IMG/VR virus record: IMGVR_UViG_3300032242_003291
Span: 186,001-250,000 of that record
DNA length: 64,000 nt
Strand: one strand, 5' to 3'
This document shows positions 54,605 to 57,263 of this stretch, piece after piece. The translations under genes were made by a program, and so were the position numbers. How positions within the stretch are numbered: the first letter of the stretch is position 1; every line of letters starts with the position of its first letter. Below the pieces are notes generated by a model. That model was given only the letters and a program-made list of their open reading frames with translations. It did no database searches and was not told the DNA's origin.

Positions 54605-55642
54605 TTAATACCATGTTTGTCTTTTCTCATCAAACGTCCAACCATCTCTTTGTTCTCCAGGTTCTCCTGTACCTGTTGGTGGTTGTGGTGATTTTTGTGT
54701 TGTTTGCTCAGGTGCTTGTTGTGCTGATTGTTGCGCTTGTTGTGGCGCTGGTTGTGTTGTATCATTATCCCCTTCAACACCTTGTTTTGTTGTATTTCCA
54801 CTATCTTCAACAGCTGTGTAGTCACTGTATGGATTATTATTCTGAGTTTGGCCACCTTTCAAATATTCATCTTTATATGACGCCCATGCCTTTGTTGTTC
54901 TTGGACCCATTCTACCATAACCCGCACCTGTTTTGTTCAAAATATTATTAGCATACCCTGTAGCCCAACCTGCCTTGTTTTCATCTAACCAATCTTGGAA
55001 AGCCTTTACTCCTTTAATATCTTTTAATTCAGGTGGCGTCGGAGTTACACTTGAAGTAGAGCCACCCCCGCCACTTTTTTTATTAGTATCACTTTTCCAT
55101 TTTTTTGTCGCAGAAGTAAAACTATCACCATCAGCAGTGTTTATTATTAGATTAGTTCCATCTACTTTCCAAGTTCCAGTCCATGTGTCAGATACTGCTT
55201 TTCTAGCTAAAAGATTATCCCATCCATCAGAAATATAAAATTTTCCATCAGGCATAAATCCATAATAATACTTTTCATTCTCACCAGTTCTTTGTGCAGC
55301 AAGTAATCCAGTGTCTTTATTTCTCACAGTTGGATAATGAATAACCTTAAAATAAGATGTATCTTTTAGGAAAGCCATCAAAATAGGAAATTTGTCAAAC
55401 CATCCTGTAGTTGAGGCAACATTATATTTAGCGTCAAGTTCTGCTTGCTTTTTGTTAGCTGCGGCAATGTCGTCAGCAGTTCTGTGTTCAGTACCAGGGT
55501 CTATTTTGTTTAGTTCCGCTCTTTCATAACTACCAATCACATCTTCATTAAATTCTTGTTCAGAAATTACTCTACCTCTTTGATATCCAAATAAGGATTT
55601 CATTCTTGTGATATCTTCATTAATCAATTTTTTTGAATCCAT
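54605..55642 (-). CDS. leader-bearing protein with PG-binding-like segment and Gln/Pro/Thr tail
   Basis: MDSKKLINEDITRMKSL...VISEQ; VKAFQDWLD...GPRTTKAW; TATTTATAAATA at 55651-55662. Confidence 0.7.
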   Translation of the reverse strand: MDSKKLINEDITRMKSLFGYQRGRVISEQEFNEDVIGSYERAELNKIDPGTEHRTADDIAAANKKQAELDAKYNVASTTGWFDKFPILMAFLKDTSYFKVIHYPTVRNKDTGLLAAQRTGENEKYYYGFMPDGKFYISDGWDNLLARKAVSDTWTGTWKVDGTNLIINTADGDSFTSATKKWKSDTNKKSGGGGSTSSVTPTPPELKDIKGVKAFQDWLDENKAGWATGYANNILNKTGAGYGRMGPRTTKAWASYKDEYLKGGQTQNNNPYSDYTAVEDSGNTTKQGVEGDNDTTQPAPQQAQQSAQQAPEQTTQKSPQPPTGTGEPGEQRDGWTFDEKRQTWY

Positions 55643-55674: not shown

Positions 55675-55705
55675 AAAAACCCCATCCGTAGAAACGGACA
55701 GGGTT
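55675..55705 (-). terminator. intrinsic terminator after the large ncRNA
   Basis: aaccc-tgtccgt..acggatgggtttttt on the minus strand. Confidence 0.7.
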
Positions 55706-55716
55706 AAGGCAAAAAA

Positions 55717-56480
55717 GGTTGAGAATACACCAAATTGAGAGAGTCTTTACAGGAGATTATTTTGATTCCTCCGATTTCCACTTCCTTTTGAGAAGTAACT
55801 CTCAGTCACGGTCAATTAGATTAACCAATCCTTAAGTCGTAATATACTCTATTCTTACTCATCACTCTTCGAGGTTGCCACCCCAATTAATCCTTGCGAG
55901 ATTAGAGAACTTTCAAAACAATCGTATCGGGTTTGGGACCCTCTACGGCCATGAACAACTCATGACTAAGTAGTGACCTGTCTACCACGACTGATGAACA
56001 CTTTTCCTTGTATTATTAATTGATTTGTTAGAATCCAAATTTTAACAAAGGTTGTGATTTGTGGATGATAGATGTAGCGGTTCATCAAACCAGCCATCTC
56101 ATCTTTTGAACGAGACGATACTGAACTACACCTTGAAGTCTCCCGACCTCCATATCTCAAGTTTACTTCATAACTCCTACCTTGGTAGGTGAAGAGTAAG
56201 GAGAACAACAGCACCACCTGTACGAACCCATACCTTTCGGTTTTAAGTCTACTCTAATATTGAACTCCGTAATTGTATAGTTGGATGACCATACTTCTTA
56301 CAACAGCTCTACGAGTTATTCTTATTGGAGTTCCCTCCTCAACCAAACGACCCACATCGCTTGGTCACCCAACCACTTTCCCTACAGTGTTACCCTCAGT
56401 ACTAAAGGTCAGATGATATCCCGCTTGTCTACTCGAGCTCCCTTTCGGAAGCCGCAACCGTTCCAATCAAGAACGAATCA
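55717..56480 (-). ncRNA. large structured ncRNA (~760 nt), probably GOLLD class
   Basis: GC-richer tract without credible CDS; own promoter (56626-56657) and boxA-like site; long-range helices 56336-56344/55717-55725 and 56217-56222/55748-55753; next to a tRNA; 5' end approximate. Confidence 0.6.
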
Positions 56481-56625
56481 CTTTATACTACTTTCATAGT
56501 TTATTTTATGGATTATAGACCACCCAATATTTTTATTCAAAGAACTATCAAATTTGAAGGAGAGAGGAAACTTTACGACCAAGTAAACTTGGAACCTTTA
56601 CTACCTCTTTCCTTCATTTGTCTTA

Positions 56626-56657
56626 CAAAGATAAGATTGTTTTTGGAAACAATCAAA
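56626..56657 (-). promoter_or_regulatory. Bacteroidota primary-sigma promoter for the large ncRNA
   Basis: TTTG-N20-TATCTTTG; AGTTCTTTGAA at ~56536-56546 downstream. Confidence 0.85.
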
Positions 56658-56689
56658 TCTTTTAAGAGATTTTTTAACATAATAACTGA

Positions 56690-56770
56690 TTTAGTTATTC
56701 TCCATTGAAGATGTGTTATTCACCTTCAATCACCCCCTACTCGTAATAGGACAGGTTAACTTTCTCTCCG
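56690..56770 (-). ncRNA. small structured RNA of unknown class
   Basis: Own promoter (56806-56837) and boxA-like AGTTCTTTAACA (56771-56782); two hairpins; no ORF. Confidence 0.5.
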
Positions 56771-56805
56771 TGTTAAAGAACTAACAACTCTCGTCGTTTG
56801 TTTTT

Positions 56806-56837
56806 CAAAGATAAGAAGAACTTTTCAATTCGTCAAA
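56806..56837 (-). promoter_or_regulatory. Bacteroidota primary-sigma promoter
   Basis: TTTG-N20-TATCTTTG. Confidence 0.85.
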
Positions 56838-56893
56838 TCTTTTTTTAAAAATAGGGAACCTCGATTTTACGACCATAGTCAACCCATTCTTAG

Positions 56894-56965
56894 TTGCGAG
56901 GGATGGATTCGAACCACCGACCTAAAGGTTATGAGCCTTCCGAGCTACCTCTGCTCTACCTCACG
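56894..56965 (-). tRNA. tRNA-Met(CAT), initiator type
   Basis: Cloverleaf with CAT anticodon, TTCGAAT T-loop, C1:A72 mismatch, A11:U24; no encoded CCA. Confidence 0.92.
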
Positions 56966-56977
56966 ATATATCTTAAT

Positions 56978-57045
56978 GATTACAAACCCACTTCCCCACG
57001 GTCACCTATCCACGTCATGCGCTGGTTGTACCAGCGGGTGTAATC
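56978..57045 (-). ncRNA. tRNA-sized structured RNA of unknown class
   Basis: 7-bp closing stem GATTACA/TGTAATC, internal CGCTGGT/ACCAGCG hairpin, between a boxA-like site and tRNA-Met. Confidence 0.5.
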
Positions 57046-57131
57046 AAATTTATTAAAGAACTATCTCAAAAAGAAGTCCCACAAGCTTCAGTATTTCTCT
57101 CGAATCACACACTCGTGGGACATTTGTTTTA

Positions 57132-57163
57132 CAAAGGTAAGTGATAGTTTTGACACTGTCAAA
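57132..57163 (-). promoter_or_regulatory. Bacteroidota primary-sigma promoter for the tRNA unit
   Basis: TTTG-N20-TACCTTTG; leader hairpin 57077-57120; AGTTCTTTAA at 57053-57062. Confidence 0.85.
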
Positions 57164-57263
57164 TTTTTATAAAACTTTTTTTGGGGATGTTTGTCCATTC
57201 GGACTTGGATATATAAATATATCCGTTTTCATCAAAGTCTCACAAAGATAGATAAATTTTTCA

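What the first reader, a model, noticed from the sequence alone, without database searches (positions are those of the whole stretch)
56536..57250. rRNA-operon-like control of a stable-RNA cluster
Seen: three tandem units, each with a perfect sigma promoter followed by AGTTCTTT[AG]A (57053-57062, 56771-56782, ~56536-56546); one reads AGTTCTTTAACA. A further -7 element (57243) and a TATTTAT inside a palindrome (57213-57219) lie upstream. Known: rrn boxA consensus is TGCTCTTTAACA and recruits NusB/NusE. Inference: the phage uses host Nus antitermination/RNA folding for its ncRNAs at both early and late stages.
Basis: partly seen in the sequence, partly recalled or inferred. Interest (0 to 1): 0.62.

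Follow-up and report, generated by a model that had tools for sequence, protein, structure and literature searches.

The report
Host rRNA-type boxA on phage RNA genes
A 317-kb freshwater phage of Bacteroidota places the same short signal that its host phylum uses in ribosomal-RNA operons (boxA, which recruits Nus anti-termination factors) in front of its own non-coding RNA genes, including the giant GOLLD RNA, so these RNAs are probably transcribed the way rRNA is.

Summary
On the minus strand, three Bacteroidota-type promoters (TTTG-N20-TAnnTTTG) are each followed by AGTTCTTT[AG]A. They lead into a conserved structured element plus tRNA-Met, then an unnamed ~100-nt structured RNA, then an ~820-nt GOLLD RNA (Rfam, 325 bits).

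I tested the motif against rRNA operons of the host phylum. In 63 Bacteroidota 16S-upstream regions, 52 carry G[TA]TC[TA]TT[GA]A on the sense strand and none on the antisense. GTTCTTTGA is the commonest form. It recurs in the 16S-23S spacer, and the same variant usually appears at both sites in a genome. That is the classic boxA layout.

In related phages the motif sits just upstream of GOLLD in 35 of 36 distinct contexts, and in 29 of 32 more distant lake-type loci. The other three carry CGTTCTTACA at that place.

A fourth copy in this genome lies between a promoter and a phage tmRNA gene, and three other large phages show the same. Five host tmRNA genes lack it.

The phage encodes no NusB, S10 or NusG, so host factors would be used.

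The function (Nus-dependent protection from Rho, possibly aided folding) is inferred, not shown. I rate this a new member of a known kind, of moderate to high interest.

The parts
57243..57250 (-). Extra -7 element TATCTTTG ('P0'), with no TTTG at -33. It is conserved in relatives.
57207..57224 (-). Perfect palindrome that contains ATATATTTAT (57222-57213), a candidate phage-specific promoter motif.
   Evidence: 19 copies in the genome, and 15 are followed within 4-20 nt by the ATG of an ORF of at least 60 aa. The reverse complement does so in 3 of 19.
57132..57163 (-). Promoter P1 (TTTG-N20-TACCTTTG), Bacteroidota sigma-A type.
57076..57121 (-). 5'-terminal leader hairpin of unit 1, followed by a U-run (57075-57066).
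   Evidence: -24.4 kcal/mol, z -3.9. The stem is conserved in relatives.
57053..57062 (-). boxA1, AGTTCTTTAA. The 11-mer GTTCTTTAATA fits the functional consensus GYTCTTTAANA.
   Evidence: It is kept as AGTTCTTTAA or AGCTCTTTAA in 8 of the 10 related loci, with a one-base variant in the other two.
56977..57046 (-). Conserved ~70-nt structured element between boxA1 and tRNA-Met. It matches no Rfam family.
   Evidence: the outer stem changes on both sides in L236 and L140.
56893..56965 (-). tRNA-Met (CAT).
56846..56892 (-). Hairpin with a U-run after the tRNA. It contains GGTCGTAAAAT.
   Evidence: -12.8 kcal/mol, z -2.1.
56806..56837 (-). Promoter P2 (TTTG-N20-TATCTTTG).
56773..56782 (-). boxA2, AGTTCTTTAA (12-mer AGTTCTTTAACA, to 56771), preceded by a short hairpin at 56798-56783.
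56664..56768 (-). Unnamed ~100-nt RNA of three hairpins closed by one stem. It matches no Rfam family.
   Evidence: z -3.0; conserved core in relatives.
56626..56657 (-). Promoter P3 (TTTG-N20-TATCTTTG).
56549..56620 (-). Long leader hairpin of unit 3.
   Evidence: -24.1 kcal/mol, z -3.0; 5 of the 18 predicted pairs in the alignment have changes on both sides.
56537..56546 (-). boxA3, AGTTCTTTGA, identical to the commonest Bacteroidota rrn leader form.
55716..56536 (-). GOLLD RNA: variable 5' domain 56536-56134 and Rfam RF02032 3' domain 56133-55716.
   Evidence: 325 bits; full-length relatives. RNA-library contigs cover 55758-56513 and fall off at about 56536.
55678..55705 (-). Intrinsic terminator (12-bp stem plus T-run) that ends the cluster.
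   Evidence: RNA-library depth is zero beyond it.

Best explanation
The three AGTTCTTT[AG]A motifs are rrn-type boxA elements. Each is transcribed from a host-type (Bacteroidota sigma-A) promoter as part of the 5' leader of a phage non-coding RNA unit: (1) a structured element plus tRNA-Met, (2) a ~100-nt structured RNA, and (3) GOLLD. A fourth copy elsewhere in the genome precedes the phage tmRNA.

Inferred mechanism: the nascent, single-stranded boxA RNA is bound by the host NusB-S10 dimer. With NusA, NusG and SuhB this converts host RNA polymerase into an rRNA-like anti-termination complex. That complex resists Rho on these long untranslated transcripts, elongates fast, and may help co-transcriptional folding. 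The leader is then removed or lost, because abundant RNA starts at about 56536.

Shown here: the sequence, its position, identity with the rrn motif of the host phylum, and its conservation. Inferred: factor binding, anti-termination and processing.
For: (1) The motif equals the host-phylum rrn boxA. In 63 Bacteroidota 16S-upstream regions, 52 have G[TA]TC[TA]TT[GA]A on the sense strand 88-234 nt before 16S (one outlier at 392) and 0 on the antisense; GTTCTTTGA is in 27. It gave the top three non-homopolymer 8-mers in an unbiased count.

(2) The motif recurs in the 16S-23S spacer, usually as the same variant as in that genome's leader (9 of the 12 genomes with both sites). This is the classic leader-plus-spacer layout.

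(3) It fits published consensi: E. coli UGCUCUUUAACA and B. subtilis AUGAUCUUUGAAA, the latter binding NusB and following a 5'-terminal hairpin (PMC13753749); and the functional consensus GYTCTTTAANA (PMC5725501).

(4) It is retained across phages. NGTTCTTTGA lies just upstream of GOLLD in 35 of 36 distinct contexts of the close clade, many with unrelated flanks. It is present in 29 of 32 distant lake-type GOLLD loci, against 1 antisense hit, and 27 of the 28 checked have a Bacteroidota -7 element 4-65 nt upstream. The remaining 3 have CGTTCTTACA after a hairpin.

(5) Its distance to the promoter (4-81 nt) and to GOLLD (1-72 nt) varies. That fits an RNA-level element better than part of the promoter or of GOLLD.

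(6) Phage tmRNA genes carry it in 4 of 4 phages; host tmRNA genes carry it in 0 of 5.

(7) In this genome it is found only in ncRNA leaders among 59 promoter-like sites.

(8) boxA3 is predicted fully unpaired; boxA1 and boxA2 are partly paired in weak helices.

(9) The host side exists: NusB, S10, NusG and Rho are found in Bacteroides thetaiotaomicron controls, and Rho in 5 of 5 Bacteroidota genomes. The phage has no NusB, S10 or NusG.

(10) In metatranscriptome contigs, depth drops by about 10-fold and then to near zero just upstream of 56536.
Against: There is no biochemical or genetic evidence. The host species is unknown, so the rrn comparison is at phylum level.

The phage's large tRNA cluster is transcribed from promoters with no boxA, so the element is not a general requirement for phage stable RNAs.

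One huge-phage GOLLD (LR756502.1, L009) has none. GOLLD genes in prophages of sequenced isolates lack a credible one.

The upstream units use ...TTTAA, which is rare in Bacteroidota rrn leaders.

The RNA evidence comes from assembled contigs of relatives at 85% likeness. Such contigs cannot define RNA ends, and RNA libraries may contain DNA.
Confidence: 0.75

Rival explanations
1. The motif is a conserved leader signal with another RNA-level role, and only resembles boxA. Candidates are an RNase processing or stability determinant, a pause site, or the binding site of a phage protein.
For: An RNA-library contig ends exactly at the 3' edge of boxA3, and depth falls there. In the tmRNA genes the motif lies only 4-6 nt before the mature 5' end. 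A second recurrent motif, GGTCGTAAA, in the leader hairpins hints at other factors.
Against: It would have to match the host-phylum rrn boxA by coincidence, including a shared downstream extension (A-rich, then ATATTG). Its distance to the mature RNA varies from 1 to about 90 nt, which is unlike a fixed cleavage signal. A processing role and a boxA role are not mutually exclusive.
Confidence: 0.14
2. The motif is a DNA-level element: an operator for a regulator, or an initially transcribed or discriminator-like extension of the promoter.
For: In many relatives and at all four phage tmRNA genes, the motif starts only 3-6 nt after the -7 element.
Against: In the window it lies 23-79 nt from the -7 element. 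In LR745206.1 it lies after a tRNA with no promoter nearby. It is strictly strand-specific: 0 antisense hits in 63 rrn leaders and 1 in 32 lake-type GOLLD loci. It also occurs in 16S-23S spacers, far from promoters.
Confidence: 0.05
3. The motif is there by chance, or it is a passenger of a local triplication of a promoter-leader cassette, with no function.
For: The genome-wide count is not enriched: 9 against 7 for the reversed control. The three units share an extended promoter sequence.
Against: The intervening hairpins and spacings of the three units are unrelated. The motif is retained in dozens of loci with different flanks and at a tmRNA gene 120 kb away. Each position keeps its own variant across relatives: GA next to GOLLD and AA at unit 1.
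Confidence: 0.03

Closest known systems
rrn operon boxA (leader and 16S-23S spacer) and the NusB-S10/NusA/NusG/SuhB anti-termination complex
   Same: The core sequence is the same (GYTCTTTRA) and is identical to the Bacteroidota rrn form. It sits in a transcribed leader after a hairpin, upstream of a long untranslated structured RNA. It is strand-specific, and boxA3 is predicted single-stranded (PMC13753749).
   Different: It is encoded by a phage and placed before GOLLD, tmRNA, tRNA-Met and a small RNA, not rRNA. In many copies it starts only 3-6 nt after the -7 element. The upstream units use the ...TTTAA variant, which is rare in Bacteroidota rrn. No boxC was defined. Factor binding has not been tested.
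Lambdoid phage nut sites (boxA plus boxB, N protein with host Nus factors)
   Same: A phage uses a host-recognised boxA to make host RNA polymerase resistant to termination. The variant CGTTCTTACA in three relatives has the shortened T-run of the lambda boxA, as I recall that sequence.
   Different: The order is hairpin then boxA, as in rrn; in nut sites boxA comes first and then boxB. No N-like protein was identified or searched for beyond Pfam scans of eight neighbouring ORFs. The targets are non-coding RNAs, not delayed-early mRNAs.
boxA elements outside rRNA: the suhB 5' UTR and CRISPR array leaders in gamma-proteobacteria
   Same: boxA is deployed on other transcripts to block Rho, and the CRISPR case is also a long untranslated RNA (PMC5725501; mentioned in PMC13753749).
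   Different: Those are cellular genes of Proteobacteria. The Nus-target survey explicitly did not consider non-coding RNAs. Here the carrier is a phage of Bacteroidota.

Membership tests
rrn-type boxA (NusB-S10 binding element) | Core sequence matches the boxA consensus (E. coli UGCUCUUUAACA; functional consensus GYTCTTTAANA; B. subtilis GAUCUUUGAAA). | tested here: met
   boxA1 (GTTCTTTAATA) and boxA2 (GTTCTTTAACA) fit GYTCTTTAANA exactly. boxA3 (GTTCTTTGAAT) carries the ...TTTGA ending of the B. subtilis and Bacteroidota form.
rrn-type boxA (NusB-S10 binding element) | Same sequence as the boxA in the host's own rrn leader and spacer. | tested here: inconclusive
   Met at phylum level: 52 of 63 Bacteroidota rrn leaders carry the motif family, GTTCTTTGA in 27, with a second copy in the spacer. 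The host species is unknown, and some lineages use GTTCATTGA or GATCTTTGA instead.
rrn-type boxA (NusB-S10 binding element) | Lies in the transcribed leader, downstream of a promoter and upstream of an untranslated RNA. | tested here: met
   Predicted promoters lie 23-79 nt upstream. Non-coding RNA genes lie downstream. One RNA-library contig spans P2 to GOLLD. Transcription start sites were not mapped.
rrn-type boxA (NusB-S10 binding element) | Accessible (single-stranded) and preceded by a hairpin, as in rrn leaders. | tested here: met
   Hairpins lie upstream of all three; two are strong and one is weak. boxA3 is fully unpaired in the minimum-energy fold; boxA1 and boxA2 are partly paired in weak helices. 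The unit-3 hairpin shows compensatory changes.
rrn-type boxA (NusB-S10 binding element) | Conserved under selection while the flanks diverge. | tested here: met
   Present at the GOLLD 5' edge in 35 of 36 close contexts and 29 of 32 distant ones, with 3 more degenerate, and in 4 of 4 phage tmRNA leaders.
rrn-type boxA (NusB-S10 binding element) | Binds NusB-S10 and confers resistance to Rho or termination. | not testable with these tools
   Needs binding assays and reporter read-through. The complex predictor on offer handles only protein pairs.
Lambda-type nut site | boxA followed by a boxB hairpin that a phage N-like protein binds. | tested here: not met
   The hairpin precedes boxA in all units. 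No N-like gene was recognised among the eight neighbouring ORFs scanned with Pfam, which is a weak test.
GOLLD RNA (RF02032) | Match to the covariance model above its gathering score. | tested here: met
   325.1 bits against a gathering score of 150, covering model positions 1-416.

The most novel reading that the evidence does not exclude
Lake-type GOLLD RNAs, and other stable RNAs of large Bacteroidota phages, are made by an rRNA-like Nus transcription and folding machine that the phage deliberately recruits. The very abundant boxA leaders also compete with host rrn operons for limiting NusB-S10 and SuhB. In that reading the element both builds the GOLLD RNA cage and contributes to shutting down host ribosome synthesis. 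The boxA variant a phage carries would then also predict its host lineage.
Probability: 0.2. Interest if true: 0.8.

Novelty: new member of a known kind. Interest (0 to 1): 0.6.

Why it matters
GOLLD is one of the largest bacterial and phage non-coding RNAs. It forms an RNA cage, and its function is unknown (PMC12286853). Nothing in the searched literature links it to anti-termination.

A near-universal host-type boxA in front of lake-type GOLLD genes, and in front of phage tmRNA genes but not host ones, gives three things:
- A concrete, testable account of how these RNAs are expressed.
- An extension of the Nus/boxA regulon to phage non-coding RNAs and to Bacteroidota, where boxA has hardly been studied.
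- A practical recipe for expressing GOLLD in a Bacteroidota host.

It also suggests that the boxA variant (GTTCTTTGA, GTTCATTGA or GATCTTTGA) could serve as a host-lineage marker for uncultured phages.

Tried and rejected
- An Rfam scan at a permissive E-value found no known family for the leaders, the ~70-nt element or the ~100-nt RNA.
- The phage does not encode its own NusB, S10 or NusG.
- I rejected the idea that every stable RNA gene of the phage carries boxA. The promoters of the 18-tRNA cluster lie about 9 nt before the tRNAs, with no boxA.
- I rejected the idea that the tmRNA boxA was captured together with a host ssrA leader. Five host tmRNA genes have none.
- I rejected the idea that all GOLLD genes have boxA. 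Prophage GOLLDs from isolate genomes have none. The GTTCTTTGA or GCTCTTTGA seen 842-906 nt upstream in six near-identical prophages sits at the 3' end of an apparent ORF. L009 also lacks it.
- Inferring the host from the phage tmRNA against 401 Bacteroidota genomes matched only the tRNA-like 3' end and returned no taxon names.
- Relatives cannot be drawn for a virus record, and a locus cannot serve as a search centre.
- BLAST against cultured and deposited phages gave only two huge uncultured phages with GOLLD, plus tRNA-Met hits.
- Reads could be laid only as assembled contigs, so RNA ends and strand could not be established.
- The motif at window 36247 is inside a 232-aa ORF, and I treat it as chance.

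Full report
**What the window is.** The window is bases 186001-250000 of a 317,259-bp virus record, 33% G+C, rated complete by CheckV. Every feature of this finding lies on the minus strand.

Rfam finds a GOLLD RNA at 56133-55716 (325 bits; the model covers only the conserved 3' domain) and a tRNA-Met at 56965-56893. Bacteroidota-type promoters (TTTG, about 20 nt, TAnnTTTG) are strongly enriched in the window: 24 against 6.4 expected. The phage therefore infects Bacteroidota and uses host RNA polymerase.

**Checking the observation.** Three full promoters lie at 57163-57132, 56837-56806 and 56657-56626. Each is followed by a hairpin and then the motif:
- AGTTCTTTAA at 57062-57053
- AGTTCTTTAA(CA) at 56782-56771
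- AGTTCTTTGA at 56546-56537

The count alone is unimpressive: 4 against 0.94 expected in the window, and 9 against 7 genome-wide. The positions are what matter. Among 59 promoter-like sites in the whole genome, only four have the motif downstream, and all four precede non-coding RNA genes. The fourth lies outside the window, at genome position 123288. It sits between a -7 element and a phage tmRNA gene (Rfam, 80.6 bits).

**Anatomy of the cluster.** In order, the cluster reads:
- Unit 1: P1, a strong 5'-terminal hairpin with a U-run, boxA1, a conserved ~70-nt structured element, and tRNA-Met.
- Unit 2: P2, a short hairpin, boxA2, and a ~100-nt RNA of three hairpins.
- Unit 3: P3, a long hairpin, boxA3, and GOLLD of about 820 nt.
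- One clear intrinsic terminator at 55705-55678.

The hairpins and spacings of the three units are unrelated. Only the promoter and the motif are shared.

**Is it the host's boxA?** I fetched rRNA operons by scanning bacterial genomes for a Bacteroidota-typical 16S 5' sequence.
- In an unbiased 8-mer count of the upstream regions, the three 8-mers that tile GTTCTTTGAA were the top non-homopolymer words.
- In 63 Bacteroidota leaders, 52 carry G[TA]TC[TA]TT[GA]A on the sense strand, 88-234 nt before 16S with one outlier at 392. None carries it on the antisense strand.
- The variants are GTTCTTTGA 27, GTTCATTGA 10, GATCTTTGA 9, GTTCATTAA 4, GTTCTTTAA 1 and GATCATTGA 1. AGTTCTTTGA, identical to boxA3, is the commonest 10-mer.
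- The motif recurs in the 16S-23S spacer. Of the 12 genomes with both sites, 9 use the same variant at both. That is the classic boxA layout.
- Many rrn copies continue with an A-rich stretch and ATATTG, as the phage leaders do.

Published consensi agree: E. coli UGCUCUUUAACA; B. subtilis AUGAUCUUUGAAA, which binds NusB and follows a 5'-terminal hairpin (PMC13753749); and the functional consensus GYTCTTTAANA (PMC5725501).

**Conservation in other phages.**
- A scan of IMG/VR with a GOLLD 15-mer gave ten full-length relatives with the same cassette. boxA1, boxA2 and boxA3 each keep their place and their own variant, while the adjacent 8-10 nt vary.
- A more specific scan gave 48 loci with 36 distinct upstream contexts. 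All 36 have NGTTCTTTGA upstream; in 35 it lies at the GOLLD 5' edge. Several contexts have wholly unrelated flanks.
- A scan with a pattern from the GOLLD 3' end reached more distant loci. Of 32 environmental ones, 29 have the motif 686-826 nt upstream, at the GOLLD 5' edge, against 1 on the antisense strand. Of the 28 checked, 27 have a Bacteroidota -7 element 4-65 nt before it. The other three have CGTTCTTACA after a hairpin.
- The huge uncultured phage LR745206.1 has the motif twice, before a tRNA and between a tRNA and GOLLD. LR756502.1 has none.
- GOLLD genes in prophages of isolate genomes have no credible copy.

The association therefore holds for the lake-type clade of Bacteroidota phages, not for all GOLLD genes.

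**tmRNA comparison.** All four phage tmRNA genes examined (this genome plus three other 250-310-kb phages) read: -7 element, 3-5 nt, [AT]GTTCTTT[AG]A, AATAT, then the tmRNA. Five host tmRNA genes go straight from promoter to tmRNA. The phages therefore add the element; they did not inherit it with the gene.

**Who would read it.** The phage encodes no NusB, S10 or NusG. The same searches find all three in Bacteroides thetaiotaomicron. Rho is present in all five Bacteroidota genomes tested.

**RNA evidence (weak).** Four freshwater and estuary metatranscriptomes hold relatives of the locus. Contig depth is very high over 55758-56513. It falls about ten-fold in the bin that contains boxA3 and to near zero over the leader hairpin. 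It is zero past the terminator. One contig ends at 56536. Another spans from P2 into GOLLD at lower depth. This fits a leader that is transcribed and then lost. Contigs cannot define RNA ends, however, and RNA libraries can contain DNA.

**Limits and rivals.**
- The 18-tRNA cluster of this phage has promoters without boxA, so the element is selective.
- A processing signal, a DNA-level promoter extension and pure chance are each disfavoured. The arguments against them are the variable distances, strict strand specificity, occurrence in rrn spacers and retention across unrelated flanks.
- Only binding and read-through experiments can settle the function.

**The 'early and late' claim.** ATATATTTAT (57222-57213, inside the palindrome) occurs 19 times in the genome. 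In 15 of these the ATG of an ORF of at least 60 aa follows within 4-20 nt, against 3 of 19 for the reverse complement. One copy lies upstream of the tRNA cluster. It is a plausible phage-specific promoter class, so two promoter classes may feed this cluster. Its timing is unknown.

**Verdict.** The boxA reading is well supported by comparison with rrn operons and with other phages. The mechanism remains inferred. I found no paper linking GOLLD to boxA or anti-termination.

Noticed in passing
outside the window: genome C1:123288-123700 (locus L003 1501-1913): The phage encodes a tmRNA (Rfam, 80.6 bits). Its promoter is followed directly by AGTTCTTTAA. The same layout occurs in three other large phages (L400-L402) but in none of five host genomes.
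   Followed up: yes
window 57224-57207; 19 sites genome-wide: ATATATTTAT, often inside a short palindrome, lies 4-20 nt before the ATG of 15 ORFs. It is a candidate phage-specific promoter giving leaderless or short-leader mRNAs. One copy lies upstream of the tRNA cluster (genome 139046). An ATATTTAT-containing stretch also lies about 10 nt before the ORF that starts at 55642.
   Followed up: partly
window 57046-56977 (-): A ~70-nt element between boxA1 and tRNA-Met has a nearly invariant core (GCATGACGTGGATAGGTGAC) and an outer stem that changes on both sides in L236 and L140. It has no Rfam match and may be a new structured RNA motif.
   Followed up: partly
window 56768-56664 (-): A ~100-nt RNA of three hairpins closed by one stem has its own promoter and boxA. 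Its core is conserved in relatives, but the unit is absent from L144 and L221. It has no Rfam match.
   Followed up: partly
window 56600-56560 and 56875-56860 (-): A GGT(A/C)GTAAA(G/A) motif recurs on both arms of the internal loop of the unit-3 leader hairpin and again in the hairpin after tRNA-Met. It also occurs in leaders of relatives. It is unexplained and may be a protein-binding site.
   Followed up: no
L182, L202, L153, L177, L224 (between boxA3 and the GOLLD start): A ~65-nt insertion with its own hairpin separates boxA from GOLLD in several relatives. This shows that boxA is not part of the GOLLD fold.
   Followed up: partly
L353, L323, L332 (about 750 nt upstream of the GOLLD 3' end): At the usual boxA place, a hairpin is followed by CGTTCTTACA. 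This variant has a shortened T-run, like the lambda nut boxA as I recall that sequence.
   Followed up: no
L010 2074-2170 and L009 2276-2395: These are tRNA-like genes with intact acceptor and T arms but a long insertion in the middle. They lie next to GOLLD in two huge uncultured phages.
   Followed up: no
outside the window: genome C1:138185-138619: Spacers of 114, 56 and 117 nt between tRNAs of the large cluster are G+C-rich relative to the genome. They may hold further small structured RNAs.
   Followed up: no
window 57121-57066 (-): The unit-1 leader hairpin is followed by a U-run and looks like an intrinsic terminator placed upstream of boxA1. The arrangement is conserved in most relatives. 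It could be an attenuator or a 5' stabiliser.
   Followed up: no
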